From positions 124,001 to 188,000 of the IMG/VR virus record IMGVR_UViG_3300009181_000033: 64,000 nucleotides of DNA. One strand, 5' to 3'. The position numbers and the translations under genes are program-made. Positions 29,491 to 63,999 of the stretch are shown in pieces. Numbering within the stretch: the stretch's first letter is position 1; each line of letters starts with the position of its first letter. A model generated the notes under the pieces. The model did no database searches. It was not told the DNA's origin and saw only the letters and a list, made by a program, of their open reading frames with translations.

Positions 29491-29503
29491 ACAGGAGTGC
29501 AAA

Positions 29504-30823: not shown

Positions 30824-30859
30824 AAACCAAATATATATTTTATAATATCAAGAGGAACA

Positions 30860-34155: not shown

Positions 34156-34161
34156 TCAACC

Positions 34162-34764: not shown

Positions 34765-34779
34765 TTTTTCCTTTATTTT

Positions 34780-39169: not shown

Positions 39170-39227
39170 ATTCTTAACTTACCTCACCAATAATCAAGGT
39201 TGCACTTTTTATTGTATATTTTTTGCC

Positions 39228-49069: not shown

Positions 49070-49443
49070 GCTGATACACTGTACACTACATCCTTATACA
49101 GTGTATCAGCATGCTTCGCATATTCCTTATCTAATTCGGTTATCTGGTCTACATCCTTCGTGTAAACATCCAACACCACTTCATTCTCATTAATCGTTAT
49201 GGTGGCATTGTGCATCGTCTCATCTTCGTATTTTAAGAGAGATCTCACAAAATCATTTCTTAAATCTTGATTAAGAAATTGAAATTTCTTTCTGAGGCGG
49301 CGGGGCGACTCTATTTTTTCCCATTTGTTGACGGCCATAATGGGAACATCTTTTTCACGCGGCAAGACTGGCAGTGCCCCAAAATTCATTGGCCTCCTTG
49401 CTTTGTCGATAAACTCTTCGTGTAGACGAGAAAGCTGCTTCAT
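49066..49443 (-). CDS. Pterin-4a-carbinolamine dehydratase (PCD/DCoH)-like protein
   Basis: W...LRKKFQF...HNATITI...YTKDVDQITELDKEYA; catalytic histidines partly lost. Confidence 0.65.
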   Translation of the reverse strand: MKQLSRLHEEFIDKARRPMNFGALPVLPREKDVPIMAVNKWEKIESPRRLRKKFQFLNQDLRNDFVRSLLKYEDETMHNATITINENEVVLDVYTKDVDQITELDKEYAKHADTLYKDVVYSVSA

Positions 49444-50204
49444 AAAAGAACGTAACCTCCCACTACAGCTGCCTCAGTAAATGATGAGCCATTCGTCCAA
49501 ACGTTCCTGTTTCTATCTACGATGCAAGAGCCGCCTTTGAACTCCAGATCTCTCTCCTTGCCAACCCTATTCGAGACAACGACGTTCGCGTCTGTTTCTT
49601 CTGCTAGTTCAACCCATGATGAATCAGGATAGCCATAATCACTGCCCCAATTCGTCAATAGGGCTATTGTGTCGACAGAGCCATTTTTATAAAACCTCTG
49701 TTCATTCTTATAGAATTTATAACTATCTCTATAGTTGTTCATGACATCCCTACAAATCAACACACCTGTTCTTCCTGCTTTGGTGATTATAACAGGGTGC
49801 ATTGCCTCTGATGAAGTCGCCCATAAATTATCGGATCCCCACAGGTTGTGCTTCTGGCAATTCTCAACAAGGCCACTTGGTCCAACAATGGCAGCTGAAT
49901 TAAACAATTGATCTCCACGTTGTTCAACATAGCCAAAGACTATGTGGGTGTTAAATTTCTTTGCTATAGGGGCAAAAACTTCGGTTTGATAACCGTTTTT
50001 CTCCTGTGCACAAGAAGCTGCTTCTCTTTTGTTTTCCAAGACATAACCACTGATGCATAGTTCTGGAAGAACAACCAAACATGCGCCTTTAGCTGCAGCT
50101 TCGAAAGCCATTTGTTGTGCTGTTTTTAAATTTGCATATACGTCCAGGATCTTTGGCTGAAACTGGACTGCTGCAACGATAGGCGCATTTTGCATTTCAA
50201 TCAC
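49440..50204 (-). CDS. Carbon-nitrogen hydrolase (nitrilase superfamily)
   Basis: Triad LPEL, QKHNL, LICRD; SNRVG, FKGGS. Confidence 0.9.
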   Translation of the reverse strand: MIEMQNAPIVAAVQFQPKILDVYANLKTAQQMAFEAAAKGACLVVLPELCISGYVLENKREAASCAQEKNGYQTEVFAPIAKKFNTHIVFGYVEQRGDQLFNSAAIVGPSGLVENCQKHNLWGSDNLWATSSEAMHPVIITKAGRTGVLICRDVMNNYRDSYKFYKNEQRFYKNGSVDTIALLTNWGSDYGYPDSSWVELAEETDANVVVSNRVGKERDLEFKGGSCIVDRNRNVWTNGSSFTEAAVVGGYVLL

Positions 50205-52829: not shown

Positions 52830-53085
52830 CCATCATTAGGCCTTTTATCTGCTTCTTTCTATTGGCCTTCGCGTCTTCTAGCATGGCTTTAATTCTCTTA
52901 GAAACTAATCGTTCGAAAGTTCTTTCTGCCTTCATGCTATCCTCGGCCATTGTTTCAGCATAGTCAGAAAAAAGTTCTTGCATTGTAAGATTGTGTTTAA
53001 ACATTTTTTCCCTAAGAGTTGCGTGAACCTCTTTGGGTATTTTTATATGCACACATTTTCTACTTTGAAACAAATCACTTCTCAA
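52759..53085 (-). CDS. Putative ribbon-helix-helix DNA-binding protein
   Basis: KCVHIKIPKEVHATLREK...TMQELF pattern. Confidence 0.5.
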   Translation of the reverse strand: MRSDLFQSRKCVHIKIPKEVHATLREKMFKHNLTMQELFSDYAETMAEDSMKAERTFERLVSKRIKAMLEDAKANRKKQIKGLMMGELDSNTLYSLLEEAEKTNNEKW

Positions 53086-53627
53086 GCGCTTCCCCCCATA
53101 GGACCTGCTGCCCCTGCTTTGGGAGCAATATTCTCATCTTCCATCTCAAAATTTGACTTACCGATCTCAATGTCATAAGAATCAAGCAAGTCAGCATTAA
53201 AAGATTCAACAACATCTTCTTCGTAATTTTTGGCTATATAATTACTGGCTCTTCTCAAGATTGTATTTCTCACCTCAAGAAGGGAATCGTAATTTTCTAC
53301 AAGCCTCATGACGTCAGAAACAAAAGAACGAATATCAATATCTTCAGCAGTTAATTTCTCAGGCTCTTCGTCCAGGACTTCGTCTTCATCATCAGCAGAT
53401 TCTTCGTCATCTTCAGCTTCGAACAACCTCCTGACTAGAGAACGAAAGTCACTCCCTTCTGTCTTGACATTCTTGGCCTCAGATTCATATGTGCTAAAAT
53501 ACTTGTCTATCTGGGCATCCAGAGAGTCTTCACCAGGCTCCATTTCTTCTTCCTTCGCTTCCCTTAAAAAGGAAGCAACTACACTACGAAGATAAAATTT
53601 TTTGCTTTTTTTTGAGTGAGTCATCAC
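53082..53627 (-). CDS. Acidic hypothetical protein with two tag copies
   Basis: YLRSVVASFLREA and FRSLVRRLFEA. Confidence 0.65.
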   Translation of the reverse strand: MMTHSKKSKKFYLRSVVASFLREAKEEEMEPGEDSLDAQIDKYFSTYESEAKNVKTEGSDFRSLVRRLFEAEDDEESADDEDEVLDEEPEKLTAEDIDIRSFVSDVMRLVENYDSLLEVRNTILRRASNYIAKNYEEDVVESFNADLLDSYDIEIGKSNFEMEDENIAPKAGAAGPMGGSA

Positions 53628-54385
53628 TTCACCACCTGAGCTATTTGTTCTGCCTTCTTAAATCTTTCTTCAATGGTTTCCCAATTAAATTCTCTCATTT
53701 GGGCAATAAGATAACTCTTTTTATCGTTGAGATAATCTCTATAGTAAGAATGCTCCCACATGTCGACAACAACTAATGGATAAAAGCCAACAGGGACATC
53801 ACCGCTATGATGACTAATCATAAAGTTGACATATTTTCTAAGGAACATGTGGTATCCTAAAACTGCCCAACCACTTCCAGCAGAAAGCGCACAGGCCATA
53901 AAATCACGCTGCCAATCATCAAAAGTACCAAAATCACGTTGTAGCCTAAGGTATGCGGTTGAATCCATTACAATTTCGCTATTTGGATCAAAACAATTAG
54001 CGAAATAAAGTTCATGTAACCAAGCAGCATTTAAGTTATAAACTTCATCAAGCTTAAGAGATCTATATGACGAATGTCTGGAATTGGTGTCAGATCTCTC
54101 TGCAGTATCAAGCTCAGAAGAAACCTTATTGAGACTCTCAACATATCCTTTGTAAAGATCAACGTGCGCACTCTTAGTCTTTTGTGAAACAAACTCAGAG
54201 ACTTGCTTGAATTGCTTTGGCTCATGAACGTATGATTCATTCAAATCAATTTTAGGCAAATTGGCAGTTACCTTTGTCATGTGAACATTCAATGTTTTTT
54301 TGATTATACCTTCAACGTCAACGTTGGCAAAGAGATTTTTATTATCAGTCAAGCTCATATTCGTCCTCCAGGGTGTCTTTATCAA
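53624..54385 (-). CDS. Fe/Mn superoxide dismutase-family protein with an N-terminal extension
   Basis: AH...YKGYV, LHELYF, FGTFDDW, GSGWAVL, DMWEHSYY. Confidence 0.85.
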   Translation of the reverse strand: MIKTPWRTNMSLTDNKNLFANVDVEGIIKKTLNVHMTKVTANLPKIDLNESYVHEPKQFKQVSEFVSQKTKSAHVDLYKGYVESLNKVSSELDTAERSDTNSRHSSYRSLKLDEVYNLNAAWLHELYFANCFDPNSEIVMDSTAYLRLQRDFGTFDDWQRDFMACALSAGSGWAVLGYHMFLRKYVNFMISHHSGDVPVGFYPLVVVDMWEHSYYRDYLNDKKSYLIAQMREFNWETIEERFKKAEQIAQVVK

Positions 54386-54626
54386 CCAAAAAATCGGTGC
54401 CCTCAGGCGTCTTCAATATAGCATCGCGAGGACCAACTGAAACAATCGTATAGAGAAATTGAGTCTTCTTGTGTCTCAACTTCAAATCCTTATCCAAGAC
54501 CTGTTCTTCTTTTCCATCGACCTTGGTTTTAAAAATGGCATCAACGCTCTCAGACAATGTTTTGAGTTTTGCATCCCACTCTTCTCTCATTATCCGGATG
54601 ATTTCAGATTCAGTAAGTTTTTTCAT
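54345..54626 (-). CDS. Hypothetical protein with N-terminal tag
   Basis: MKKLTESEIIRIMREE; ATATTTA and GGGAG upstream. Confidence 0.65.
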   Translation of the reverse strand: MKKLTESEIIRIMREEWDAKLKTLSESVDAIFKTKVDGKEEQVLDKDLKLRHKKTQFLYTIVSVGPRDAILKTPEGTDFLVDKDTLEDEYELD

Positions 54627-55057
54627 GTTTCTCCCTTAAATATTATGTCGGAGAATCTAATTACTTCAATACCGCAAGATTTAATCAATTCAATGCCTTC
54701 GGTGTTTCTATATTCATTTTCGTAAACAACCCTATGAATATTTGCATTGATAATTAATTTAGAACACTGTGGACATGGAGAGTGAGTCAAATACATCGTC
54801 TTCTCTTGGTTGAAGTTATAATCACATTTTATAAGCGAATTAACTTCAGCGTGAATAAATCCGCTCTGGCCAGGATCTAAAGAGTCTGGTTCATTGGGGC
54901 CTCCCCGATAATTTCCGTTATATCCTAAAGACAAAAGTCTAGTGTTGTCTTTGGAGACTATAATCGATCCTACTTTGAGTCTTGGATCATAAGATCGATC
55001 AGCGACAGTACGAGCAATGCTCATCCATGTTTCATCCCAAGAAGGTCTTCTACTCAT
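54623..55057 (-). CDS. dCMP deaminase
   Basis: RPSWDE, LGYNG, HAEVN, SPCPQC. Confidence 0.93.
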   Translation of the reverse strand: MSRRPSWDETWMSIARTVADRSYDPRLKVGSIIVSKDNTRLLSLGYNGNYRGGPNEPDSLDPGQSGFIHAEVNSLIKCDYNFNQEKTMYLTHSPCPQCSKLIINANIHRVVYENEYRNTEGIELIKSCGIEVIRFSDIIFKGET

Positions 55058-55058
55058 A

Positions 55059-55637
55059 TTAATTTCCATATGTTTTTTGTCTATTGTCAACATAAAGATA
55101 GTGACTATAGCACCTGGGTTCATACAATTCTGAGCCACCCACCTCTATTTCATCACCACCCGTCTGTTTTTTATGAGTATAGTGTGCATCTCTTCCACAC
55201 ACAGTGCAAACAGCCGTGCACTTCTCAAGACTTGTTGCCCAAACAGACATTTTTTCTATCTCTTCAAATGGCTTACCAGTCGCAGACATCTCAAGAGATG
55301 AGACTACAATAGTAAACCCATTCTTATATAACCACACCAAAGACTCGGCTATTCCTGGAATCATGAATGCTTCATCTACTGCAATCACCTGAGGGTTGTC
55401 CGGAGAATTGGCAAGATGCTCAAGAAGATCAACTCCCGTCTTTACACGAACGGCAGGCAACTTCCATCCAGCATGTGTGACAATTTCTCCTTCGCCATAC
55501 CGGTCATCCATAGAAGGCTTAAAAGCTACAACTTTCTTGTGTTGGTACTTGTATCTCTCAAGGGCTGAGAGTAGCCTCGAGGTCTTCGAGGAAAACATGG
55601 GACCGGTATAGACTATGAATTCGGGATTGTTTGACAT
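55059..55637 (-). CDS. tdk: Thymidine kinase
   Basis: GPMFSSKTS, VDEAF, CTVC, VGGSELYEPRC. Confidence 0.9.
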   Translation of the reverse strand: MSNNPEFIVYTGPMFSSKTSRLLSALERYKYQHKKVVAFKPSMDDRYGEGEIVTHAGWKLPAVRVKTGVDLLEHLANSPDNPQVIAVDEAFMIPGIAESLVWLYKNGFTIVVSSLEMSATGKPFEEIEKMSVWATSLEKCTAVCTVCGRDAHYTHKKQTGGDEIEVGGSELYEPRCYSHYLYVDNRQKTYGN

Positions 55638-55638
55638 A

Positions 55639-56595
55639 TCACATTTCCTTTAGACGGTGCCAGTTGGATAAGTACCAATCTATCGTCTGATCAAGTCCAT
55701 TCCAAAAGTCCATCACAGGCTCATATCCTATAACGTTTTTCGACTTTCTTATACACGCATGAGTATGCATAATATCACCCGGGCGCCATGGAGCAACATG
55801 ATGTTTGGCGTCAGGAAACCTACTCAAGAGATAGTCTAGAATTTCTTTATTGGAATAACTTAAGCCACATGCAACGTTAAATGCTTCACCTTTCAGTTGA
55901 TTTTCTGCAAGGGCAGCCTTGATGCAAGCTTCAACGACATTGTCGACGTGACACATGTCTCTTGTTTGGGAGCCATCACCATCAGATCTCATCGAATTTC
56001 CTGACATAATGGCAGTTAACCACGCAGACACAGCTGTTGAATAAGGGGAGCCACCGAGCTGATTATTCCCGAAGACATTAAAGAATCTCATGCAAGCAGA
56101 GTCCAAGCCGTAGAGTTTCGAATAAAGCCCAAGGTATTGTTCTATCAATAATTTCTGTAGTCCATATGGTGACTCCGGAACTGTATTTGCTCTTTCATCT
56201 GTTGGCAATAAATCTACTTGTCCATATACGGCTGATGAAGAAGCAAAGATAAACCTCTTGATGTTTCCCTTGCAAGCGTCAATTAGCTCAAGACTCTTGG
56301 TGACATTCGTATCATTGGTTTTAATGGGTTGCTCTACGGAATAGGAAACTCGAGGATTGGCCGCGAGGTGGAACACATAATCGTATTTTCCATCTCTTAT
56401 TCTTTTTAATATACGTGGAGAAGAAAAATCAGAAACTATCAAATTTTCTGATTCGATTGCAAATGGAATGAAAGTCAAATTTCCATTTGACATATCATCC
56501 ACCATGTCAACTTCCCAATTGTCATTAATCAACTTTAAAGAGAGGTTGCTTCCAATGAAACCACAGCCACCAGTCACCAATGCTCTTTTATTCAT
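55639..56595 (-). CDS. NAD-dependent NDP-sugar epimerase/dehydratase (WbpP/GalE-like)
   Basis: TGGCGFIGS, FHLAA, SSSAVYG, YGLQK, RFFNVFG, GDGSQTRD. Confidence 0.92.
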   Translation of the reverse strand: MNKRALVTGGCGFIGSNLSLKLINDNWEVDMVDDMSNGNLTFIPFAIESENLIVSDFSSPRILKRIRDGKYDYVFHLAANPRVSYSVEQPIKTNDTNVTKSLELIDACKGNIKRFIFASSSAVYGQVDLLPTDERANTVPESPYGLQKLLIEQYLGLYSKLYGLDSACMRFFNVFGNNQLGGSPYSTAVSAWLTAIMSGNSMRSDGDGSQTRDMCHVDNVVEACIKAALAENQLKGEAFNVACGLSYSNKEILDYLLSRFPDAKHHVAPWRPGDIMHTHACIRKSKNVIGYEPVMDFWNGLDQTIDWYLSNWHRLKEM

Positions 56596-56601
56596 AAACT
56601 C

Positions 56602-57612
56602 TCATTTCTTAAAATAATGATAACCCTTAAAAAGGGTGCCTTCCAAAATAAGATTTGAAAGATTCTTGTCATTCAACTTGATGGCCCTGTGCGAAGCCAA
56701 AATTTTGCACCAATCATTCCAGTATGGGTCGTTGGCTTCAAAATGCTTTGCCGTGTTGCCCAAAGCAATCAACAGTTGTTTGTTTGTCTTTGCCTTTCGG
56801 AAATTTGTCTCCACAATTGAAAGGCCGACAGTTGGAACTTCACTTGGGAGCTCTGGCATTTCCTCGGGCAGTTCGTGCCTAAACTTCCAAGAATCATCAA
56901 TGATCTTTTCAACCATCCCGAAGTGTCTCTCGTAAATGTGAAGAGAACCACTTGTGTGAATATAGTCGCCAAGACCAATCGGTCTTCCTAGTTCCTTCGT
57001 TAATTGAATCGCCAATAGTTCCTGGAACAAGGTAAAGGCAGGGACATCATAGGCCAACCCAAGGATTAAATCAGAAGAACGCATGGTTGTGACCATGTGC
57101 ACCTTATCTTTCCTGAGGAAAAACTGGAGGGACAAGGTGCAAGGCACATCAAGGTTGGCATAAATCGAATCCTTAGGTGACCTGATATGAATTATTGCAC
57201 GCCTTGAATCAGGATCTTTCTTGAGCTCATCTACGACATACTTCCACTGAGACCAATCCTCAGAAACATCGCCTGCAATCCTGTCGTGTGGTCTGAATAT
57301 TCTTGCGCCGTATGCACTGTTCGCAGTCTTGCCGTCATCTGAAATCTTTGACCAGAATGTCGAATAGTTTGAAATCCAACTCGTTGAATCATTTGCGCTA
57401 AAATACCACAGCAGCTCAGCAATCATATAGTGAATGGAAAAATCCCTCTCCTTCACATAAGGAATTCTATTCCTCGGGTTCGTGATCTTAAACTGATAGG
57501 CGATGCTCTCCTTGATTCCTAGTCCGCGAGGAGAAGAAGAATACTCAGGATTTTCATAAACATCCTTGAGGATGTCAAGGTAAGCATCGGTGAAATTGTC
57601 GTAAGTTCTCAT
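56602..57612 (-). CDS. Thymidylate-synthase-family enzyme, probably a dCMP hydroxymethylase/methylase
   Basis: DSRRA, VPCT, MRSSD, GLAYDV (Asp at the base-specificity position), SLHIY. Confidence 0.85.
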   Translation of the reverse strand: MRTYDNFTDAYLDILKDVYENPEYSSSPRGLGIKESIAYQFKITNPRNRIPYVKERDFSIHYMIAELLWYFSANDSTSWISNYSTFWSKISDDGKTANSAYGARIFRPHDRIAGDVSEDWSQWKYVVDELKKDPDSRRAIIHIRSPKDSIYANLDVPCTLSLQFFLRKDKVHMVTTMRSSDLILGLAYDVPAFTLFQELLAIQLTKELGRPIGLGDYIHTSGSLHIYERHFGMVEKIIDDSWKFRHELPEEMPELPSEVPTVGLSIVETNFRKAKTNKQLLIALGNTAKHFEANDPYWNDWCKILASHRAIKLNDKNLSNLILEGTLFKGYHYFKK

Positions 57613-57613
57613 A

Positions 57614-58279
57614 TTATTTTCCCGTCAAGAGATGGTAGGAGTCAATGAAATTCTGCCACTTGTCGTGGTTCTGACAGGTCGAAGAATAAACAGATAAATT
57701 AACCTGTTGCTTTGAATAGATCGGTTTAATGAAAAACTCTGTGATGGTCAGGATGTCAATAAGCAGCTCATTCTCAACATCAGAAGCCCTGAACACCAAT
57801 CGAGGAGAGTCCTTGAAATAATGTATCAGATTGAGGCACGTCACATCTTGAGGTGACAACATCTCACTGTCAGAATATTCTGTGAATGGATTTGCAAACC
57901 GAACAACACATCGACGTGTGTCTGGTTTCTTCGTAAGATGTTTCTTTATCTCTTCCAACAAGAATGTGTAATTGACATTGTTGTGTTTTTCACAAGCCAC
58001 CGTATAAATGGTTGACCTGAGAGAAGGTAGTTTCGTCAAGGATCGAAGACTAGGTCTTGATTCGGAAAATTCAGCAAAAACACTCGGCTTAATGTTGTGA
58101 CTTGCGAAGGCATTTCTTTTTGTGTCATAATAGGCTGCCACATCAGGAGATAAATTCTTAAGTCTCCTGATCGCCTCATCTCCCAAGGGAAGATTAGTCA
58201 CATCAAGACGAATGAGATAATCATCATTTTCGAATTCTGGCTTCTTTACTGTAATCATTTTTTCATCCATCAAAATCAC
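57614..58279 (-). CDS. Second, divergent thymidylate-synthase-fold protein
   Basis: PDTRRC, DVTCL, FRASD, LLIDI; lacks the HxY motif. Confidence 0.6.
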   Translation of the reverse strand: MILMDEKMITVKKPEFENDDYLIRLDVTNLPLGDEAIRRLKNLSPDVAAYYDTKRNAFASHNIKPSVFAEFSESRPSLRSLTKLPSLRSTIYTVACEKHNNVNYTFLLEEIKKHLTKKPDTRRCVVRFANPFTEYSDSEMLSPQDVTCLNLIHYFKDSPRLVFRASDVENELLIDILTITEFFIKPIYSKQQVNLSVYSSTCQNHDKWQNFIDSYHLLTGK

Positions 58280-60029
58280 AGAGAAAGAGGTAAGGTAGTT
58301 CGAGGTTCATTTCCTGAGCCTTGTCAAATTCAAACTTAAAGCTATCAAGAACACTGTCAATTGCGTAAACAATCGGACGACCGTGGGCATTGAAGCTAGT
58401 GTTAATTAGCGCCTTAGATTTCGGATAGATCTTGGAGAGCACCTCGAACATAAATGTATCGTTCGATGTTACTCTCTGGGGGCGACCTGACCAAACCTCT
58501 CTGTTAGGATATTTATGTGCAATGCCTCCATAGTTCTCAAGATCAGGATTTAAATAGTTATAGGTCAGGATCATATACTTGTCTGAGCCTACCACTCTCT
58601 TTGAAATGTCTTTGTCAAAGAATTCATCAATCGCTGAATCCAACATAACAGGGGCCATAGGCATAACGGTGTCTCTCTCATTTAGATCATTGATGATCAT
58701 AACGTTAGTTGTCGTTGGAATGGAAAGAGTGGTCGTGCTGCAAAGAGCCCGAGGGCCAAATTCCATCCTGGACTTGACAACGTTGACAAGTTTGTTCCTG
58801 GAGACCAAATCGACCGTATCATCAATCGCTGTTGATCTTTGGTTGGAAGAATAATGCCTAATATGACTACCGTATTTCTTTAAATCACTTGGAGAAATAC
58901 AACTATCCCAATCAGCGAACTCTGGTCGAGGGCCCCACTTAAGGTCTCCCCATTTAAATCCGCCAACAAAAGCCTCGTACATTCCCATTCCGCAACCCTG
59001 GTCACCTGCCAGGGGGACAACTGAAAACACTCCGGAAGTAGAATTTAGAACCTTGTTGTTGAGCTTCACATTGTAGAAAATTCCACCAGAAAGAGCCACG
59101 TGTTTCATGTTGTTGGCACTGACGATCTTCGCCAGGACACCTTCAATCACCTCTTGAATGTAATGACCAATTGCGATCCTAACATCACGACCAGTGATGC
59201 TCGGGGCCACCTTGGATAGAACGTCGGCGTAATGCTCATTCCATGACTGCTTTACAGTCTTGAGATAATCGATGTTGGCGAGGCCGTCAGTCTTCCAATT
59301 CTCCGGACGACCATCTGGTTTCGCCTGCATTGTATCGAACATCTCTTGAGACTTCTTTACAGCAAGGCTCCGGAGCAAATCAATTTGTGTTGAATCCAAT
59401 AGCTGTGAAACATGTGTCTCATAGCCAAGGAACTTATACTCATCCTGGTTCTCCTTCATCCCACAGAAGGAGGTCGCAAACTGATACATCAGGCCAAGTG
59501 AATACTGATATCCGTAATATCTGTTGACCAGCTGGGGAACTGTGCCGAGAGAATCGGTGCTATAGACACTAATGACTTCCTGTGAATTGCCAAATCCATC
59601 TGCAGCGATGATGTGAAACTTATCATAACTTACAACCTGAGATGAATGTTTAGAAACATCCCACTGATCTCTCATGAAGGAAAGAGCTGACATGGCATGT
59701 GCGTCGTGATGAGTGAAGTCCTCGCCCAAGTGAACTGTCTTTAGAGAATATTTGACCACGAGAGAATCAAAGTGTTGCTTGTCAAAGTACTTGCTGGTCT
59801 CTGTGTGGAAATCAAACTTATCGAACCAATGAGAAACAAAAATATAGCTGCCTGGCTCGATCTTAACGTGCTTCTCGATCTCATCCAAAGAAAGACGAGG
59901 ATATGCGCTGGAAGATTTAATGCGATTGATTCGCTCCTCTTCATAACCGATGACAGTCTTGTCACCATCGAAATAAACAGCAGAAGAGTTGTGCCCGAGA
60001 GTAATCATTAATGCAGACTTTTTGTTCAT
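58263..60029 (-). CDS. NodU/CmcH-family O-carbamoyltransferase
   Basis: GHNSSA, EEERINRIK, HHDAHA, DGFG, SLGLMY, EYKFLG, GDQG, EFGPRAL, MPMAP, NTSFNAHG. Confidence 0.93.
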   Translation of the reverse strand: MNKKSALMITLGHNSSAVYFDGDKTVIGYEEERINRIKSSSAYPRLSLDEIEKHVKIEPGSYIFVSHWFDKFDFHTETSKYFDKQHFDSLVVKYSLKTVHLGEDFTHHDAHAMSALSFMRDQWDVSKHSSQVVSYDKFHIIAADGFGNSQEVISVYSTDSLGTVPQLVNRYYGYQYSLGLMYQFATSFCGMKENQDEYKFLGYETHVSQLLDSTQIDLLRSLAVKKSQEMFDTMQAKPDGRPENWKTDGLANIDYLKTVKQSWNEHYADVLSKVAPSITGRDVRIAIGHYIQEVIEGVLAKIVSANNMKHVALSGGIFYNVKLNNKVLNSTSGVFSVVPLAGDQGCGMGMYEAFVGGFKWGDLKWGPRPEFADWDSCISPSDLKKYGSHIRHYSSNQRSTAIDDTVDLVSRNKLVNVVKSRMEFGPRALCSTTTLSIPTTTNVMIINDLNERDTVMPMAPVMLDSAIDEFFDKDISKRVVGSDKYMILTYNYLNPDLENYGGIAHKYPNREVWSGRPQRVTSNDTFMFEVLSKIYPKSKALINTSFNAHGRPIVYAIDSVLDSFKFEFDKAQEMNLELPYLFLCDFDG

Positions 60030-60094
60030 AGATTCTCCAGAAGATTTTTATCTTACACCTGTATCAGTAACTTGTCTCTCAAAAAATGGACAAA

Positions 60095-60574
60095 TTATTT
60101 TCGCCTTTTGTATTCAGAAATAACGAATTCCAAATTCTGTTCGTTGGGCTCAATGATGAATTTGTCAATATTCAAAGTGGGATAGATCTCACGATATGCC
60201 ACCTTCACCTTTTCATTCTGTTCCTTCGTAACTGTCTCTTCCCTGCCAATCCAAGGTCGATTGAGCTCGAGCAAGATCATGAAGTACCCTAGATCAGAGA
60301 ATTTGCTCTCAATTTTGTCCTTGATTTCTGTGGTGATGTTGTTTCTCGAAAAGACCTTGCCATAGGACAGCTCGGAAATGTAAGAGCGATCGAAAACAAA
60401 CGGTCCACCTCGCTGGTCGATATCAACGAAATATCCGTTGAAATAATCATAATCCTTGGCAGCCGGTCCGTAATGAATCACCTCAATCCCTAGGCGCTCC
60501 TGCAGCTTCTTGCAGAAAGTCGTCTTGCCCTGCTGTTCAGCTCCCTCAACAATAATTCCACCTGTCTTCATCAT
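60095..60574 (-). CDS. Thymidylate-kinase-like dNMP kinase
   Basis: IVEGAEQQGKTT P-loop, FDRSYISELSYG. Confidence 0.8.
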   Translation of the reverse strand: MMKTGGIIVEGAEQQGKTTFCKKLQERLGIEVIHYGPAAKDYDYFNGYFVDIDQRGGPFVFDRSYISELSYGKVFSRNNITTEIKDKIESKFSDLGYFMILLELNRPWIGREETVTKEQNEKVKVAYREIYPTLNIDKFIIEPNEQNLEFVISEYKRRK

Positions 60575-63500
60575 TCCTCCTCTAGGATCTTAATCTTGCT
60601 CATGAAGGTTTTGCACCCGTAAGAATCAATGGTGATCTCAGAGATACAAACCGAATATTCCGGGAACTCCTTCTTCCCATCCCATCCCCAACAAAACACT
60701 CTCTTTAGCTGTCCAGATGGGCCAGAAGCATCCAGAATCAAATAAGGCTTGCCATTCTTCGTTTCTTTTTTCTTGGCATTAAGAACGACAAACCAGCAAA
60801 TGTCGCTGGCCTCGATCTCGTCAATCGGCCTGATGTTTTTCTCGTTGAATTTCCTCAAGATGTAATCGGGAACAAGGGAGATTGGGTTGAATGTGCTGAG
60901 GAACTTCGTGCAGTTACTGACGAACTCTTTTCTCGTCCAATCTTCCATGTCCTCAGTCGAGAGAAGGAGGTCCCTGAAGGCCTCCATTCCAGCAAATGGA
61001 TTCTTCTTGGTCGACTTCTTAATATCGTTGCTCTTGTTAATCAGGATCTCGTGCATCTGTTTGTAGCTACTAAAGGTCTTGCCAGGACCAACGGAGTCGA
61101 GAGAATCGAAAGCCTTGATTGAAATCAGGGCCTCGAGGCCTCGCTTATTAAACTTGGAGTGCCTCCACGTGCCATCCTCTGTCCAGAGGAGTTGTTCAAT
61201 TGACTCGTAAGGTCGATTCTCGATAATCTCCTCGATAGCCGATGAACCGACGCCTTTGCAGGAAAGGAAACTCGGCATGAATCTCTTTCCGTCGAGGATT
61301 GTCCATGAGGCTGTGGCGTGATTGATGTCAATGGGAACAATCTTATATCCAAGGGCCTTAACCTCAGAGAAAGCCTTTGTTCGTTTGTCATCGCTGTCCG
61401 ACATGGACTCGAGATAAGCACAGAGCCACTCCTCCTCGAAGTAAGTCAGGAGCCATGCACAATAGTAGGAATCGATAGCGTAAGAGAAGGCATGTGCAGA
61501 ATTAAAGCCGTAACCGGCGAAGAACAAAATCTTTTCATAAAGATCGTCTGCAACTTTTTCAGGCACTCCGTTCTTAATGGCCCCAGCGACAAAGTCCACC
61601 TTCGTTTTCTTGGCTTCCTCAACACCCTTCGCACCATCCTTGGCAGTCGTCTTCTTCATGATGTTTCGTCGGATGGTGTCCGTCTCTGTCTCAGGGAAAC
61701 CAGCCACAACAGAGCACAATTTCATTACCGATTCCTGGAAAATGATGCAACCAAAGCTTGGCTCGAGAACCTGCTTGATCAGTGGATGCTGATAATCGAT
61801 CTTGTCAGGATTTGCCTTGGCGTCCAAATACAACTTGTCGACGTTTGCGGCCAAGGGACCGGGACGATAGATTGAAGTCAATGTTGCAATGTCGAGGATG
61901 CTCCTCGGCTTTGCCTTCATGAATAGTCTCTGTGCACCGGCGTTGGCGAGCTGGAAGATGCCGGCGAATCGACCTTCGTGGTACACGTACTCATAGACCT
62001 TCTGGTCGTTTAGGTCGATGTTCTTCGGATCCATGTGCTTATCAAACCAAGCACGAACCTGTGCGAAAGTCGGATTCTCGATACCTTCACGGCGCTGGAG
62101 GATGAGCGAAATGCATCGCTCAATAATCCTCAAGGTTTCAAGGCCAAGGAGGTCGAACTTAATCCAACCGAGCTCCTCAAGGTGCTTGGCAGCCATGCCT
62201 TCGGCCCATGGAGTCTGAGGCTCGCCCCTCGCAAGAATCAGAGGCATCCTTTCTGCGATGTTTTCAGAAACAATGACTCCTCCAGCATGGCGACCCAAGG
62301 ACCTGTTCTGTCGAAAGAGAATCTTGATGGGATCGGCAACCTCGGGATGAGCCGCAATGAAGTTCTGGAGGGACTTCGAATATTGAATGGCGTCCTCGTA
62401 AGAGAGGACGAAGCTGTTCTTGTCATGTCCTGGCTTGAAGATGACCTTTTTGACATCATCCTCGATCGGTGCCATGGCAGCGTTGACCTCCTCGAATGGA
62501 ATTCCATAGAACTTAGAAATGTCCTTGATGAGGCTCTTCAGCTTGAAGGTGTTGTAATTGGAGATCGGAATGACATTCTCGTTGCCAAAGTTCTTTCGGA
62601 GCAACTCAATCAACCTGTCTCGGTCGGAGATATCACTATCGATATCAGGGAATCCTGAATTGTGTGTCAGCGTCCAATTTGTTCCTGATGTAGAAACCCA
62701 AAAAGTGTGATCTTCATCAACTTCAATGTCAATCAAATTGACATCATTCTCATGATCAATGATCTCGATCTTGTTGATCTTTGTAGGCTCTTGTTGAACA
62801 AAGAAATTATCCATTGGCAGTATGTGCTGTGCTTGAACTTCAATTTGTTTGCCTTCCCTTAGGACTAACCAAATATGATTTGGTGAACATTCGAAAATAT
62901 TAGAGCTCACATGAAGTCTGTATGTTTTCTTAGAGTTAGAATTAAATTTCTTTTTGATTTTTCGAGGAACTAAAGAACCCCCAACAACAACATCACCTTC
63001 AACTAGCTCTTCGATTTTTTTATGCCCGCTCGGTGTTTTCACCAAAGTCCCAGGCAAAAGACATCGATGGGGATTCATGAATCTCTCGAAAGGAAGATCA
63101 TATTCGATAGGATCGAGGTTGGTAATGCCAAGGACGTATGCAACGAGAGCACCAGCAGCAGAGCCACGACCAGGACCAATCAACATGTTTTCCCTGGCGA
63201 TGTCGAGAATCTTTTTCATGGTCAAGAAGTAATTGGAGAACTTCTTGTCCTTGATGATCTTCAGCTCGTACTTGAGTCGATCGATGTATTCCTGCTTGTC
63301 CTCCAAACCTCGCCAAACAAGACCCTTCTTGCAAGCCTCGACTAGAGCCTTGTCTTCAGTTAGTCCCTCAGGAATGGCATAGGAAGGCAGCTTCATGGAT
63401 CGATCAGGGTGTGCCTCCTGCAGCTCATTATGAACGATGTCGTGTGTCCTCTCGATTGCATCACAAACAATCGTATCATCATAGAAGGACATTCCTTCTG

Positions 63501-63999
63501 TTGTCTTACGATAGGTGTCCCAAAGCTGTGTGGCATTCTTGGGATAAAGCTCACACTTTAGATCTTCTACGGTTTGAGGAAGATCCTTGGGATTGAAACT
63601 CTGATAGTTCAACCACCCAAGCTTCTTATAGATCTCCCTCTCCCGCCAGTGCTCAGGTCGAGAATAGTGAGAGTCACAAGTGACAACAAGGCGGTCAGTC
63701 AAGGAATTTCGCTTGGCAAATTCGATGATCGCGCGGTTGGCAAGGTGCTGCGCTGACAGCTTGTTAAACTGAATCTCGAGACAGACGTTTTCCTTACCAA
63801 CCGCATCAGAGAGTCGATCGTAGGTGTTGCCCATGGAATTGAGCACCTTTTCCATGAGAGACTGATCGTTGAGCAAGTCATGCTTCAGATCATCGAATGG
63901 AATCTTCTGGAGCTGCTCAAAGATATCGTAACAAAGTGGGCCACCAAGGCATGCTGTGCTCACCATAAGGTGGCCACCCTTGGCAGCTTCCTTCAACAT
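60571..63999 (-). CDS. dnaE: DNA polymerase III alpha subunit (5' end outside the window) containing an intein
   Basis: TACLGG, DSHY, GPGRGSAAG, FERF, PDIDSD, GRHAGG, KFDLLGL, GYGFNSAHA. Confidence 0.96.
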   Translation of the reverse strand: MLKEAAKGGHLMVSTACLGGPLCYDIFEQLQKIPFDDLKHDLLNDQSLMEKVLNSMGNTYDRLSDAVGKENVCLEIQFNKLSAQHLANRAIIEFAKRNSLTDRLVVTCDSHYSRPEHWREREIYKKLGWLNYQSFNPKDLPQTVEDLKCELYPKNATQLWDTYRKTTEGMSFYDDTIVCDAIERTHDIVHNELQEAHPDRSMKLPSYAIPEGLTEDKALVEACKKGLVWRGLEDKQEYIDRLKYELKIIKDKKFSNYFLTMKKILDIARENMLIGPGRGSAAGALVAYVLGITNLDPIEYDLPFERFMNPHRCLLPGTLVKTPSGHKKIEELVEGDVVVGGSLVPRKIKKKFNSNSKKTYRLHVSSNIFECSPNHIWLVLREGKQIEVQAQHILPMDNFFVQQEPTKINKIEIIDHENDVNLIDIEVDEDHTFWVSTSGTNWTLTHNSGFPDIDSDISDRDRLIELLRKNFGNENVIPISNYNTFKLKSLIKDISKFYGIPFEEVNAAMAPIEDDVKKVIFKPGHDKNSFVLSYEDAIQYSKSLQNFIAAHPEVADPIKILFRQNRSLGRHAGGVIVSENIAERMPLILARGEPQTPWAEGMAAKHLEELGWIKFDLLGLETLRIIERCISLILQRREGIENPTFAQVRAWFDKHMDPKNIDLNDQKVYEYVYHEGRFAGIFQLANAGAQRLFMKAKPRSILDIATLTSIYRPGPLAANVDKLYLDAKANPDKIDYQHPLIKQVLEPSFGCIIFQESVMKLCSVVAGFPETETDTIRRNIMKKTTAKDGAKGVEEAKKTKVDFVAGAIKNGVPEKVADDLYEKILFFAGYGFNSAHAFSYAIDSYYCAWLLTYFEEEWLCAYLESMSDSDDKRTKAFSEVKALGYKIVPIDINHATASWTILDGKRFMPSFLSCKGVGSSAIEEIIENRPYESIEQLLWTEDGTWRHSKFNKRGLEALISIKAFDSLDSVGPGKTFSSYKQMHEILINKSNDIKKSTKKNPFAGMEAFRDLLLSTEDMEDWTRKEFVSNCTKFLSTFNPISLVPDYILRKFNEKNIRPIDEIEASDICWFVVLNAKKKETKNGKPYLILDASGPSGQLKRVFCWGWDGKKEFPEYSVCISEITIDSYGCKTFMSKIKILEEE
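62659..63063 (-). mobile_element. Mini-intein (135 aa, no homing endonuclease)
   Basis: Starts CLLPGTLV, block B CSPNH, ends DIEVDEDHTF...LTHN/S; removal restores FMNPHR-SGFPDID. Confidence 0.92.

What the first reader, a model, noticed from the sequence alone, without database searches (positions are those of the whole stretch)
54623..60574. Probable cytosine hypermodification operon: two TS-fold enzymes, carbamoyltransferase, dNMP kinase and NDP-sugar epimerase
Seen: a tightly coupled operon directly downstream of dnaE, in the order dNMP kinase, carbamoyltransferase, divergent TS-fold protein, TS-family enzyme, epimerase, thymidine kinase, dCMP deaminase. The full-length TS has MRSSDLILGLAYD, with Asp where dUMP-specific ThyA has Asn. 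Established: that Asp marks dCMP-specific enzymes such as T4 gp42, and phage NodU-family carbamoyltransferases acting on 5-hydroxymethylcytosine are known. Inference: the phage makes hm-dCMP, phosphorylates it with its own kinase and carbamoylates it. The second TS-fold protein and the epimerase are not needed for that known route. They could indicate a more elaborate base (for example a carbamoylated glycosyl-cytosine) or two different modified pyrimidines.
Basis: partly seen in the sequence, partly recalled or inferred. Interest (0 to 1): 0.85.

Follow-up and report, generated by a model that had tools for sequence, protein, structure and literature searches.

The report
Phage cytosine carbamoylation operon with extra enzyme
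A giant phage carries the known gene set for turning DNA cytosine into hydroxymethyl- and then carbamoyl-cytosine, and next to it an uncharacterised miniature relative of thymidylate synthase that always travels with that set, so the final DNA base may be something not yet described.

Summary
On the minus strand, directly after dnaE, lie seven genes: a small TMPK/dNK-fold kinase, a NodU/TobZ-type carbamoyltransferase (CT), a 214-221 aa divergent TS-fold protein (sTS), a 336 aa TS homolog, a GalE/WbpP-like epimerase, thymidine kinase and dCMP deaminase.

The TS homolog has the full dCMP hydroxymethylase signature. Its best solved relative is MilA.

CT + Asp177-TS + dCMP deaminase is the published MetaGPA module, whose CT converts 5hmC to 5-carbamoyloxymethyl-C in vitro. 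The core is therefore a new member of a known kind.

sTS is the new part.
- It is a discrete family of 99 clusters at 50% identity, with no Pfam model and no match in 50,697 GenBank phages.
- In 22 further non-duplicate loci it always lies beside CT, wherever the upstream flank is present. A kinase and a hydroxymethylase-type TS accompany it in nearly all.
- It keeps the catalytic Cys, Tyr94, Arg166 and the cytosine-specifying Asp. The folate-activating Glu58 is an invariant Lys.
- I read it as an active, non-folate enzyme tied to carbamoylation. Its reaction is unknown.

The epimerase looks like a genuine UDP-hexose 4-epimerase. It occurs only in the closer jumbo-phage relatives, so it is accessory. 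No glycosyltransferase lies in the operon.

The parts
60571..63999 (-). DnaE-type DNA polymerase III alpha. It is cut by the window edge and carries a Hint/intein-like insert. Its stop overlaps the kinase start by 4 nt.
   Evidence: Orthologs in L005, L007 and L012 carry PF02811, PF07733 and PF17657. tblastn to relatives gives 53-88% identity.
60095..60574 (-). Small (159 aa) P-loop nucleotide kinase of the TMPK/dNK fold. It is the predicted dNMP kinase for the modified dCMP.
   Evidence: Weak Pfam AAA_28 and Thymidylate_kin hits; PHROG 761 at 9e-9. AF2 model pLDDT 92; Foldseek top hits are YorR 3kb2, human TMPK and dNK. Walker A GxxxxGKT and a DRSY motif are present. A homolog was detected by tblastn in 19 of the 22 further non-duplicate loci. 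Three more contigs have a P-loop or kinase-sized gene at that position.
58263..60029 (-). NodU/TobZ-type O-carbamoyltransferase (588 aa). It is predicted to be a 5-hydroxymethylcytosine carbamoyltransferase.
   Evidence: Pfam Carbam_trans_N and _C; PHROG 1601. It is 34-38% identical over 96-99% of its length to the CTs of Bacteroides phage BF503P1, Xp15 and Acinetobacter phages, all of which sit beside Asp177 TS genes. It shares all conserved blocks with the enzyme characterised in PMC8670742 (sequence printed, compared by eye).
57614..58279 (-). sTS, a divergent short TS-fold protein. The longest ORF starts at GTG 58279. The likely start is ATG 58270 or 58258, giving 218 or 214 aa. It is a probable non-folate enzyme acting on a cytosine nucleotide.
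   Evidence: No Pfam, PHROG, NCBIfam or PDB sequence hit. AF2 pLDDT 94 and Foldseek hits to MilA, ThyA and AfhB. hhalign against TS gives E = 1.8e-6. The family has 99 clusters at 50% identity. Conserved residues: Asp at C-3, Cys148, Arg164, Ala165, Asp175, Lys54 and Tyr92.
56602..57612 (-). MilA-like TS homolog (336 aa) with a C-terminal extension. It is the predicted dCMP 5-hydroxymethylase.
   Evidence: PF00303 at 1.5e-31. The best PDB relative is MilA 5jnh at 9e-42; T4 gp42 scores 9e-13. Residues present: E58, W80, Y94, R126, R127, C146, R166, S167, D169, D177, H207, Y209 and Asp at C-3.
55639..56595 (-). Extended-SDR NDP-hexose 4-epimerase of the GalE/WbpP/WbgU type. It is an accessory component of the cassette.
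   Evidence: PF01370 at 1e-47. PDB hits: 6dnt 5e-53, WbgU 4e-45, WbpP 1.5e-39. TIGR01179 galE scores 156 bits, below its cut-off of 262. GalE residues S124, Y149, K153, N179, R231, R292 and D295 are conserved. Orthologs at 39-75% identity occur in 10 of the 22 further non-duplicate loci.
55059..55637 (-). Thymidine kinase.
   Evidence: PF00265 at 8e-38; PHROG 592.
54623..55138 (-). dCMP deaminase. The longest ORF starts at GTG 55138. The probable start is ATG 55069, giving 148 aa as in relatives.
   Evidence: PF00383 at 4e-21; PHROG 174 at 1e-51. Relatives are 131-150 aa.
53624..54626 (-). A conserved 93-aa protein and an Fe/Mn-SOD-like protein. Both are syntenic downstream in the jumbo relatives. 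Their membership of the pathway is not shown.
   Evidence: Sod_Fe_C at 9e-21. The DxWEH motif is kept. Synteny.

Best explanation
This is the nucleotide-level cassette by which a roughly 298-kb uncultivated jumbo phage replaces DNA cytosine with a 5-hydroxymethylcytosine-derived, carbamoylated base.

Proposed steps; the gene assignments rest on sequence and structure, the reactions are inferred.
1. dCMP deaminase and thymidine kinase lower dCMP and feed the dTTP pool.
2. The 336-aa MilA/gp42-type TS homolog adds the methylene of CH2-THF to C5 of dCMP and lets water attack, giving 5hm-dCMP.
3. The small TMPK/dNK-fold kinase makes the diphosphate. Host NDP kinase makes the triphosphate. The phage DnaE polymerase incorporates it.
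4. The NodU/TobZ-type carbamoyltransferase uses carbamoyl phosphate and ATP to O-carbamoylate the 5-CH2OH, either on the free nucleotide or on nascent single-stranded DNA. The product is 5-carbamoyloxymethyl-cytosine, as shown in vitro for a homologous phage enzyme.
5. The short TS-fold protein (sTS) is a further catalytic component coupled to the carbamoyltransferase. It keeps the residues for binding a cytosine nucleotide and attacking C6. It has lost the folate-activating glutamate. It most likely performs a non-folate reaction on dCMP or on the 5hm/5-carbamoyloxymethyl nucleotide. The end product may therefore differ from plain 5cmC.
6. The GalE/WbpP-like epimerase supplies a UDP-4-epimer sugar. 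It is a lineage-specific add-on whose acceptor is unknown.
For: Hydroxymethylase signature of the TS homolog:
- Asp177 specifies dCMP (PMC8670742; PMC13326640).
- An acidic residue three positions before the catalytic Cys specifies hydroxymethyl rather than methyl.
- Asp169 is retained, so it is not a 5-hydroxy-dCMP synthase (RB69 gp48 control).
- Arg126/Ser167 indicate deoxyribose preference (PMC5175136).

Known enzymology: a phage CT found beside such a TS converts 5hmdC in DNA and 5hmdCTP to 5cmdC. It needs carbamoyl phosphate and ATP. That CT co-occurs with TS and dCMP deaminase only on cytosine-modified contigs.

The window CT is full-length homologous to CTs beside Asp177 TS genes in cultured phages.

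Conservation of the cassette:
- CT lies beside sTS in every one of the 22 further non-duplicate loci whose upstream flank is present.
- Two unrelated hydroxymethylase lineages, MilA-like and T4 gp42-like, occupy the TS slot in different relatives while CT and sTS stay. This points to 5hm-dCMP supply as the selected function.

sTS: TS fold. At least 90% conservation of Asp(C-3), Cys148, Arg164 and Asp175. Lys54 and Tyr92 are invariant.
Against: - No chemical data exist for this phage or any relative. The modification state of its DNA is unknown.
- 5cmdC has so far been shown only in vitro, not in a cultured phage's virion DNA.
- The identity of the window CT to the characterised enzyme was judged only by eye on conserved blocks. 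No tree places it in the 'modified' clade.
- No dCTPase (dUTPase-like or MazG/PRA-PH) was found in the 64-kb window, although the known modules and the divergent sTS cassettes have one. It could lie elsewhere on the 298-kb contig.
- The role assigned to sTS rests on residue conservation alone. Two of the 29 aligned family members lack the Cys.
Confidence: 0.6

Rival explanations
1. The carbamate is an activating group, not the end product. CT turns the 5-CH2OH into a leaving group. sTS attacks C6 with Cys148 and expels carbamate, regenerating the exocyclic methylene intermediate of TS chemistry. It then captures another nucleophile, for example ammonia to give 5-aminomethyl-C. In relatives that carry an ATP-grasp ligase the product is extended further. 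The logic parallels thymidine hypermodification, where 5hmU is first phosphorylated and then substituted.
For: - sTS lies beside CT in all loci with an upstream flank and tracks CT identity, while the TS partner can be swapped.
- sTS keeps the C6 nucleophile and the Asp at C-3, which in hydroxymethylases sits where water attacks the methylene.
- Glu58 is replaced by Lys and Trp80 by Leu, which argues against folate use.
- A PF15632 ATP-grasp gene sits between kinase and CT in 7 of the 22 further non-duplicate loci.
Against: - This is purely mechanistic inference. No such base is known in phage DNA.
- The invariant Tyr92 aligns with Tyr94, the C5-H abstracting residue. That fits a substrate with a C5 hydrogen (dCMP) better than a 5-substituted one.
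- The characterised CT product was stable enough to be measured.
Confidence: 0.2
2. sTS makes a second, independent C5-modified dCMP by adding a non-folate electrophile to C5 of dCMP. The electrophile could be an activated oxygen, carbamoyl or carboxyl species. This would follow the logic of the flavin-dependent AfhB/RB69 gp48 5-hydroxy-dCMP synthases. The phage would then have two modified cytosines, or CT would act on the sTS product.
For: - sTS is the size of AfhB (217-234 aa), and AfhB structures are among its Foldseek hits, with TM 0.54-0.57 and the lowest rmsd, 5.6 A.
- Cys, Tyr94-equivalent and Asp177-equivalent are conserved.
- An Fe/Mn-SOD-like gene and a pterin-4a-carbinolamine dehydratase are syntenic downstream in the jumbo relatives. 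This would fit oxygen chemistry, but it is weak circumstantial evidence.
Against: - The published diagnostic D169N is not met. The close family has Asp167, and no member of the wider alignment has Asn there.
- RB69 gp48 keeps Glu58 whereas sTS has Lys.
- Two enzymes competing for the same dCMP pool would give mixed DNA.
- The characterised CT did not accept substrates other than 5hmC nucleotides.
Confidence: 0.12
3. The base is glycosylated. 5hmC in DNA receives a Gal or GalNAc from the UDP-sugar made by the epimerase, and the CT carbamoylates either the sugar or the remaining 5hmC.
For: - The epimerase has all the UDP- and NAD-binding and catalytic residues of GalE/WbpP-type enzymes and sits inside the cassette in the window and 10 relatives.
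- NodU, NolO and TobZ carbamoylate sugar hydroxyls (established knowledge).
- The window also encodes a UDP-sugar pyrophosphorylase (35465-36514) and a GT2-methyltransferase fusion (32851-34155) on the same strand.
Against: - No glycosyltransferase lies in or next to the cassette in any of the 23 loci.
- The epimerase is absent from all divergent sTS cassettes and from some close ones.
- The GT2 is about 21 kb away and is fused to a methyltransferase, an architecture typical of glycan or protein glycosylation.
- The homologous CT acts directly on 5hmC.
Confidence: 0.1
4. sTS is not an enzyme. It is a nucleotide-binding regulatory, scaffold or chaperone subunit, for example one that presents 5hm-dCMP to CT or sequesters dCMP. 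The end product would then be plain 5cmC.
For: - sTS is strictly adjacent to CT and shows translational coupling.
- It has lost Glu58 and Trp80.
- Two family members have lost the Cys, and several divergent ones have lost Asp169 and the Arg-Arg pair.
- CT works alone in vitro.
Against: - Cys148, Asp(C-3), Arg164, Asp175 and Tyr92 are near-invariant across a family with only 29% mean column identity. That is hard to explain without catalysis.
- The TS partner is exchanged between lineages, so an obligate TS heterodimer is unlikely.
Confidence: 0.15
5. This is ordinary nucleotide metabolism. The TS homolog makes dTMP, the CT and epimerase serve glycan or cell-surface chemistry, and the DNA is canonical.
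For: TK, dCMP deaminase and a TS-family gene next to the polymerase are a common dTTP-supply arrangement in large phages.
Against: - Asp177, the acidic residue at C-3 and the rest of the hydroxymethylase signature are present in every TS of the cassette.
- CT + Asp177-TS co-occurrence was found only on cytosine-modified contigs.
- The four-gene core is conserved across very divergent phages.
Confidence: 0.04

Closest known systems
MetaGPA 5-hydroxymethylcytosine carbamoyltransferase module (Yang et al., eLife 2021, PMC8670742)
   Same: A two-domain NodU/TobZ-type CT lies next to a TS homolog with Asp at position 177 and a dCMP deaminase, in a phage. The conserved CT sequence blocks are shared with the characterised enzyme. 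The predicted product is 5-carbamoyloxymethyl-cytosine.
   Different: - The window has no PRA-PH/MazG pyrophosphohydrolase.
- It adds a dedicated small kinase, the sTS protein and a UDP-hexose 4-epimerase.
- It sits in a jumbo phage next to DnaE.
- Cultured phages with the simple module (Xp15, Acinetobacter MD-2021a/Effie/HHU4, Bacteroides BF503P1) lack sTS.
T4 hydroxymethylcytosine pathway (gp42 dCMP hydroxymethylase, gp1 dNMP kinase, gp56 dCTPase, Cd dCMP deaminase, alpha/beta-glucosyltransferases)
   Same: The pre-replicative logic is the same: a TS-homolog hydroxymethylase with Asp177 and an acidic C-3 residue, a phage dNMP kinase, a dCMP deaminase, and a group transfer onto the 5-CH2OH.
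   Different: - The transferred group is predicted to be carbamoyl rather than glucose.
- The hydroxymethylase is MilA-like (E = 9e-42) rather than gp42-like (E = 9e-13).
- No gp56 homolog lies in the window.
- The kinase is a 159-aa TMPK/dNK-type protein, not gp1.
MilA, CMP 5-hydroxymethylase of mildiomycin biosynthesis (PDB 5jnh, 5b6d; PMC5175136)
   Same: It is the best solved relative of the 336-aa TS homolog, aligned over residues 2-257. It has Asp at 177 and at C-3, and a comparable total length with a C-terminal extension. It is also the top structural match of sTS.
   Different: - MilA has Lys133/Ala176, which favour ribo-CMP. The window TS has Arg/Ser, the deoxy signature.
- sTS has Arg plus an invariant Ala at the Ser167 position, which is half of the ribo signature.
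- MilA works in secondary metabolism, not DNA precursor synthesis.
Flavin-dependent 5-hydroxy-dCMP synthases (HY126 AfhB, RB69 gp48, DLP3 gp80; PMC13326640)
   Same: These are short TS-fold enzymes of about 217-238 aa that act on dCMP through the catalytic Cys with a non-folate cofactor. They show that the TS fold has been recruited for new C5 chemistry in phages. AfhB structures match the sTS model.
   Different: - The diagnostic D169N is absent from both window proteins.
- RB69 gp48 keeps Glu58, whereas sTS has Lys.
- These enzymes are detectable by sequence as TS homologs, whereas sTS is not. The window TS hits 9iqu at 5.6e-12, but the sTS profile finds no PDB sequence.
Thymidine hypermodification pathways
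   Same: The analogy is one of logic only. A hydroxymethyl-pyrimidine is first activated with a leaving group and then substituted.
   Different: - The base is different (U rather than C).
- The activating chemistry is different (phosphate rather than carbamate).
- The protein families are unrelated.
- Those reactions act on DNA, not on free nucleotides.

Membership tests
MetaGPA-type 5hmC carbamoyltransferase module | Two-domain NodU/TobZ-type carbamoyltransferase (Carbam_trans_N + Carbam_trans_C) | tested here: met
   PF02543 at 2e-11 and PF16861 at 5.5e-23; PHROG 1601 at 5e-58 over residues 6-565.
MetaGPA-type 5hmC carbamoyltransferase module | Adjacent TS homolog with Asp at ThyA position 177 | tested here: met
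   The TS gene lies one gene away and has Asp177.
MetaGPA-type 5hmC carbamoyltransferase module | Co-occurring dCMP deaminase and PRA-PH/MazG pyrophosphohydrolase | tested here: inconclusive
   A dCMP deaminase is present. No PRA-PH, MazG or dUTPase-like gene was found in the 64-kb window. The other 234 kb of the contig was not examined.
MetaGPA-type 5hmC carbamoyltransferase module | CT belongs to the clade found on cytosine-modified contigs and resembles the characterised enzyme | tested here: inconclusive
   The window CT is 34-38% identical over its full length to CTs beside Asp177 TS genes in cultured phages. Blocks shared with the published sequence were judged by eye only. No tree was built, and the three differential residues (TobZ W408, G421, R423) were not mapped.
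MetaGPA-type 5hmC carbamoyltransferase module | Carbamoylation of 5hmC with carbamoyl phosphate + ATP | not testable with these tools
   This needs an enzyme assay.
dCMP 5-hydroxymethylase (T4 gp42 / MilA type) | Catalytic Cys146 plus the folate-chemistry residues Glu58, Trp80 and Tyr94 | tested here: met
   All are present in the 336-aa protein.
dCMP 5-hydroxymethylase (T4 gp42 / MilA type) | Asp at 177 (cytosine), an acidic residue at 143 (C-3; water access) and Asp169 retained | tested here: met
   The sequence reads LDVPC...MRSSDLILGLAYD. The rules come from PMC13326640.
dCMP 5-hydroxymethylase (T4 gp42 / MilA type) | Deoxyribose preference: Arg126 and Ser167, against Lys/Ala in MilA and BcmA | tested here: met
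   The motifs are DSRRA and MRSSD. The rule comes from PMC5175136.
5-hydroxy-dCMP synthase (AfhB / RB69 gp48) | Asn in place of Asp169 (D169N) | tested here: not met
   The TS homolog has Asp169. sTS has Asp167, and the wider family shows Asp, His, Leu or Cys there but never Asn. The RB69 gp48 control shows Asn.
Thymidylate synthase fold (for the 221-aa sTS) | Match to the Pfam PF00303 model or to solved TS sequences | tested here: not met
   No Pfam, PHROG or NCBIfam hit. The family profile finds no TS among PDB sequences.
Thymidylate synthase fold (for the 221-aa sTS) | TS three-dimensional fold and alignable active-site core | tested here: met
   AF2 model pLDDT 94; Foldseek hits to MilA, ThyA and AfhB at probability 1.0 and TM about 0.6. 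hhalign gives E = 1.8e-6 over 121 columns. BLASTP to the neighbouring TS gives 1e-4.
Thymidylate synthase fold (for the 221-aa sTS) | Folate-dependent catalytic set (Glu58, Trp80) alongside Cys146, Tyr94 and Arg166 | tested here: not met
   Cys148, Tyr92 and Arg164 are conserved. Glu58 aligns with the invariant Lys54, and Trp80 with Leu78. The N-terminal part of that alignment has moderate confidence.
UDP-hexose 4-epimerase (GalE / WbpP / WbgU) | GxxGxxG NAD site, Ser-Tyr-Lys triad, and UDP-binding Asn179, Arg231, Arg292 and Asp295 | tested here: met
   Alignment with E. coli GalE and six orthologs. PDB hits are 6dnt, WbgU and WbpP.
UDP-hexose 4-epimerase (GalE / WbpP / WbgU) | Score above a curated equivalog cut-off | tested here: not met
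   TIGR01179 scores 156 bits against a cut-off of 262. TviC scores 146 against 760. The substrate sugar is therefore not assignable.
Phage dNMP kinase function (TMPK/dNK fold) | P-loop, DR(Y/S) motif and TMPK/dNK fold | tested here: met
   Atlas neighbours are viral thymidylate-kinase clusters, some of them fused to TS, dUTPase or MazG.
Phage dNMP kinase function (TMPK/dNK fold) | Phosphorylation of the modified dCMP | not testable with these tools
   This needs an assay.
Glycosyl-hmC systems (T4-like) | DNA glycosyltransferase encoded with the hydroxymethylase | tested here: not met
   No GT lies in the cassette in the window or in any related locus. A GT2-methyltransferase fusion lies 21 kb away, and its target is untested.

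The most novel reading that the evidence does not exclude
sTS founds a new class of TS-fold enzymes that do not use folate. Working with the carbamoyltransferase, it would produce a cytosine derivative not yet described in any DNA. One possibility is that it uses the O-carbamate as a leaving group to install an amine or other nucleophile on the 5-methylene. Another is that it adds a carbamoyl or carboxyl electrophile directly to C5. Relatives that carry an ATP-grasp ligase or a UDG-like protein would elaborate the product further.
Probability: 0.3. Interest if true: 0.85.

Novelty: new variant of a known kind. Interest (0 to 1): 0.62.

Why it matters
Phage DNA hypermodifications decide which restriction and CRISPR defences a phage escapes. 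They have also repeatedly yielded new enzymology and tools for epigenomic sequencing.

5-carbamoyloxymethyl-cytosine is known only from one in vitro study. This locus shows that in a large group of uncultivated phages, including 175-390 kb jumbo phages, the carbamoyltransferase never travels alone. It comes with a dedicated kinase and a conserved, unannotated TS-fold protein.

That gives a concrete four-gene set to express in E. coli. It also offers a specific candidate for a third non-canonical use of the TS fold, after hydroxymethylation and flavin-dependent hydroxylation.

If sTS proves to be only a helper protein, the locus is an ordinary new member of the 5cmC module.

Tried and rejected
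- Megablast of 54000-61000 against 50,697 GenBank phages gave no match.
- tblastn of sTS against the same set at E <= 1 gave no match.
- The sTS profile against PDB sequences gave only a chance hit.
- I tested whether the unannotated genes flanking CT in cultured phages are hidden sTS homologs. BF503P1_00039, the Acinetobacter 224-aa protein and Xp15 gp40 all gave hhalign probability about 0.1. Pfam shows the first two are an AAA_28 kinase and a PRA-PH; Xp15 gp40 has no Pfam family.
- I tested whether the C-terminal extension of the 336-aa TS corresponds to the separate 180-aa gene that follows the 254-aa TS in L013/L014. It does not.
- I looked in the window for an ATP-grasp, UDG-like, dUTPase-like, PRA-PH or DHHA1 gene. 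None was found.
- Promoter and terminator scans of 53000-61500 gave counts within the range of shuffles, so they were not used.
- Single-protein scans with the window's UDPGP and GT2 proteins found only one relative each, so co-variation with the epimerase could not be tested.
- Foldseek of the sTS model against the viral library failed with 'no such model on the box'.
- Literature searches for 5cmdC follow-ups, for HY126 AfhB and for Xp15 carbamoyl found nothing beyond PMC8670742.
- The published CT sequence was not pasted into any tool, so no numerical identity to it is given.
- I considered whether the epimerase might act on the nucleotide itself, for example oxidising the 5-CH2OH. I rejected this because all the GalE UDP-sugar-binding residues are conserved.

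Full report
**Source and setting.** The window is part of IMG/VR contig IMGVR_UViG_3300009181_000033, 297,894 bp. It has no nucleotide-level relative among 50,697 GenBank phages. Other genes in the window mark it as a large tailed phage. They include a 1702-aa collagen-repeat tail fibre, GroEL and a clamp-loader-like ATPase.

**Observation.**
- Spacing runs from a 4-nt overlap to a 6-nt gap, apart from one 65-nt gap between the kinase and the carbamoyltransferase.
- Pfam and PHROG assign the carbamoyltransferase (CT), TS homolog, SDR epimerase, thymidine kinase and dCMP deaminase with strong scores.
- The kinase gets only weak P-loop and thymidylate-kinase hits.
- The 221-aa ORF between CT and TS gets no hit at all.

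**The full-length TS homolog.** Its best solved relative is MilA, the CMP hydroxymethylase (E = 9e-42). Canonical ThyA scores about 1e-16 to 1e-23, and T4 gp42 scores 9e-13. I aligned it with E. coli ThyA, T4 gp42 and the TS genes of related loci. It shows the following.
- Glu58, Trp80, Tyr94, Arg126/127, Cys146, Arg166, Ser167, His207 and Tyr209 are present.
- Asp sits at position 177.
- Asp sits three residues before the catalytic Cys.
- Asp169 is retained.

The literature read here gives the meaning of these positions.
- N177D switches specificity to dCMP (PMC8670742; PMC13326640).
- An acidic residue at position 143 goes with hydroxymethyl rather than methyl products.
- D169N marks the flavin-dependent 5-hydroxy-dCMP synthases. 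I confirmed this on RB69 gp48 as a control.
- Arg126/Ser167, rather than the Lys/Ala of MilA, goes with deoxyribose preference (PMC5175136).

The protein therefore meets every sequence criterion of a dCMP 5-hydroxymethylase.

**The carbamoyltransferase.**
- It is a two-domain NodU/TobZ-type enzyme.
- It is 34-38% identical over 96-99% of its length to CTs of Bacteroides phages (BF503P1 and relatives), Xanthomonas phage Xp15 and several Acinetobacter phages.
- In each of these phages CT lies beside a TS homolog that also has Asp177 and Asp at C-3.
- Yang et al. showed that such a CT, taken from a sewage phage contig where it neighbours a TS homolog, converts 5hmdC in DNA and 5hmdCTP to 5-carbamoyloxymethyl-dC. 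The reaction requires carbamoyl phosphate and ATP.
- They also showed that CT/TS co-occurrence is confined to cytosine-modified contigs. The other recurrent neighbours were a PRA-PH pyrophosphohydrolase and dCMP deaminase.
- The published enzyme's sequence shares all long conserved blocks with the window protein. I compared them by eye only.

**The kinase.**
- An AlphaFold2 model (pLDDT 92) matches YorR, thymidylate kinases and deoxynucleoside kinases.
- The Walker A and DRS motifs are conserved.
- Atlas neighbours are small viral thymidylate-kinase-like clusters, some fused to TS, dUTPase or MazG.
- A nucleotide-level kinase is the sensible reading.

**The short TS-fold protein (sTS).**
- BLASTP against the neighbouring TS aligns the active-site core at E = 1e-4.
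- An AlphaFold2 model built on 25 homologs has pLDDT 94.
- Foldseek hits are MilA, many ThyA structures and the AfhB dCMP hydroxylase, at probability 1.0.
- A profile of the wider family aligns to a TS profile at E = 1.8e-6 over 121 columns.

An exhaustive HMM search of 1.84 billion representatives found 99 clusters and no canonical TS. The family is therefore discrete. It has no Pfam model and no match in any GenBank phage.

Across an alignment with only 29% mean column identity, the following are conserved.
- At 90% or more: Asp145 (C-3), Cys148 (= Cys146), Arg164 (= Arg166), Ala165 (= Ser167), Asp175 (= Asn177) and Gln203.
- Invariant: Lys54 and Tyr92.

In the profile alignment Tyr92 falls on Tyr94 and Lys54 on Glu58, while Trp80 is replaced by Leu. 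So the parts that bind a cytosine nucleotide and attack C6 are kept, and the folate-activating glutamate is replaced by lysine. This argues for an active enzyme with non-folate chemistry. It fails the D169N test for the hydroxylase class.

**Context census.** I compared the window with 22 further non-duplicate loci carrying an sTS homolog. They came from 11 exact-sequence look-ups and an IMG/VR scan. Three IMG/VR loci come from contigs already sampled, and L006 duplicates L005; these are not counted.
- CT lies beside sTS in every locus whose upstream flank is present. The one contig with no detectable CT starts 548 nt before sTS.
- A kinase homolog was detected by tblastn in 19 of 22. Two of the other three have a P-loop or kinase-sized gene in that position. 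The third (L014) begins inside CT.
- An Asp177/Asp(C-3) TS is present in all but two. One of those two (L032) has a TS-family match 5 kb upstream that was not checked for the signature.
- Gene order is K-CT-sTS-TS or CT-K-sTS-TS. In one locus the kinase is fused to a UDG-like domain.
- Among the loci tabulated, sTS identity tracks CT identity.
- The TS slot is filled by two different hydroxymethylase lineages, MilA-like (324-339 aa) and T4 gp42-like (254 aa). This argues that 5hm-dCMP supply is the selected function. It also argues that sTS is tied to CT rather than to one particular TS.

Variable additions among the 22 loci:

| Addition | Loci |
|---|---|
| PF15632 ATP-grasp ligase | 7 |
| dUTPase-like (gp56-like) gene | 6 |
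| UDG-like gene | 6 |
| DHHA1 phosphoesterase | 3 |
| Epimerase ortholog | 10, all among the closer jumbo relatives |

None of the first four is in the window.

**The epimerase.**
- Its best solved relatives are a UDP-GlcNAc-type epimerase (6dnt), WbgU and WbpP.
- It keeps the GalE catalytic triad and the UDP-binding Asn179, Arg231, Arg292 and Asp295.
- It scores below every curated equivalog cut-off.
- It is therefore a real NDP-hexose 4-epimerase of unassigned sugar specificity.
- No glycosyltransferase lies in the cassette of any locus.
- The window does encode a UDP-sugar pyrophosphorylase and a GT2-methyltransferase fusion about 20 kb away. Their target is unknown.

**Interpretation.**
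- The core is the known route from dCMP through 5hm-dCMP to carbamoylation. That part is a new member of a known kind, with a dedicated kinase.
- The conserved sTS makes this a distinct variant whose end product may not be plain 5cmC.
- I rank the helper-free core model with an undefined catalytic sTS step first (0.6).
- The rivals are carbamate-as-leaving-group substitution (0.2), a non-catalytic sTS (0.15), a parallel second dCMP modification (0.12), a glycosylated base (0.1) and ordinary metabolism (0.04). These overlap and are not exclusive.

**Limits.**
- No chemistry was measured.
- The sTS N-terminal alignment has moderate confidence.
- No numerical identity to the characterised CT was computed.
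- Only 64 kb of the 298-kb contig was examined, so the absence of a dCTPase or of a DNA glycosyltransferase is not established.

Noticed in passing
window 28309-32794 (+): Three consecutive genes resemble the bacterial PrkA/YeaG serine kinase, YeaH and SpoVR stress/sporulation trio. The 644-aa PrkA-like protein is 32-34% identical to proteins of Thermus phages phiYS40/TMA and Ralstonia jumbo phage RsoM2USA.
   Followed up: partly
window 32851-36514 (-): A cluster of a GT2 glycosyltransferase fused to a methyltransferase domain (32851-34155), ClpP (34162-34764), a short HhH-GPD base-excision-type protein (35051-35464) and a UDP-sugar pyrophosphorylase, PF01704 (35465-36514). Together with the operon's epimerase and an RmlD-like reductase at 7967-8848, the phage has its own nucleotide-sugar metabolism. 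Its target is unknown.
   Followed up: partly
window 49066-50204 (-): A nitrilase-superfamily C-N hydrolase is followed by a pterin-4a-carbinolamine dehydratase. The hydrolase's weak best matches are nitrilase, the NAD synthase glutaminase domain and N-carbamoylputrescine amidase. The C-N hydrolase is syntenic about 5 kb downstream of the cassette in three relatives (L008, the P0011 contig, L014). The dehydratase follows it in the one contig that reaches that far. Any link to carbamoyl or pterin chemistry is untested.
   Followed up: no
window 53624-54385 (-): An Fe/Mn superoxide-dismutase-like protein with an N-terminal extension of about 60 aa. It keeps the DxWEH metal-ligand motif. It follows dCMP deaminase, with one small gene between, in every jumbo relative but not in the divergent cassettes.
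   Followed up: partly
window 60571-63999 (-): DnaE carries a Hint/intein-like insertion (CLLPGTLV ... THNSGF). In relatives L008 and L013 the polymerase is split into several ORFs with Hint or intein Pfam hits.
   Followed up: no
window 23770-27855 (-): DNA-repair genes: UvdE UV endonuclease (23770-24702) and an Fpg/Nei-type glycosylase (26112-26906). An SGNH/GDSL hydrolase lies at 26995-27855. A phage with modified cytosines that carries base-excision enzymes is worth a look.
   Followed up: no
window 9618-11635 (-): A response-regulator receiver-domain protein lies next to a 529-aa protein with kinase-like PHROG hits. This may be a phage-borne two-component pair.
   Followed up: no
window 21726-23357 (-), 44594-45190 (+) and 39144-40148 (+): GroEL chaperonin (PHROG 5725, 2e-151), an NMN-adenylyltransferase-like protein and a DUF6445 protein.
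   Followed up: no
L005:4946-6235, L007:4929-6200, L012:3972-5231, L019:1751-3046: Relatives insert a PF15632 (Ter-operon-type) ATP-grasp ligase between the kinase and CT. L005 and L012 also add a second, distinct SDR (329 aa, 23-30% identical to the window's). These lineages probably make a more elaborate base than the window phage.
   Followed up: partly
L028:6691-8007; L018:5530-6285; L026, L029, L030, L032: Divergent sTS cassettes carry a UDG-superfamily protein next to CT or the kinase. In L028 it is fused to the kinase in one 438-aa ORF. This hints at a step that handles the base in DNA.
   Followed up: partly
L013:8603-9912, L014:1682-2985: In some close relatives the MilA-like TS is replaced by a T4 gp42-like 254-aa hydroxymethylase. 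It is followed by a 180-aa protein with weak proteasome/Ntn-hydrolase similarity. CT and sTS remain 55-73% identical to the window's.
   Followed up: partly
L001:8468-9274 and L001:11347-12027 (Bacteroides phage BF503P1): This cultured phage has CT, an AAA_28 kinase and two TS homologs, both with Asp177 and Asp at C-3 (268 and 226 aa). It is a different kind of 'two TS' arrangement from the window's, and a tractable system for testing 5cmC in virion DNA.
   Followed up: partly
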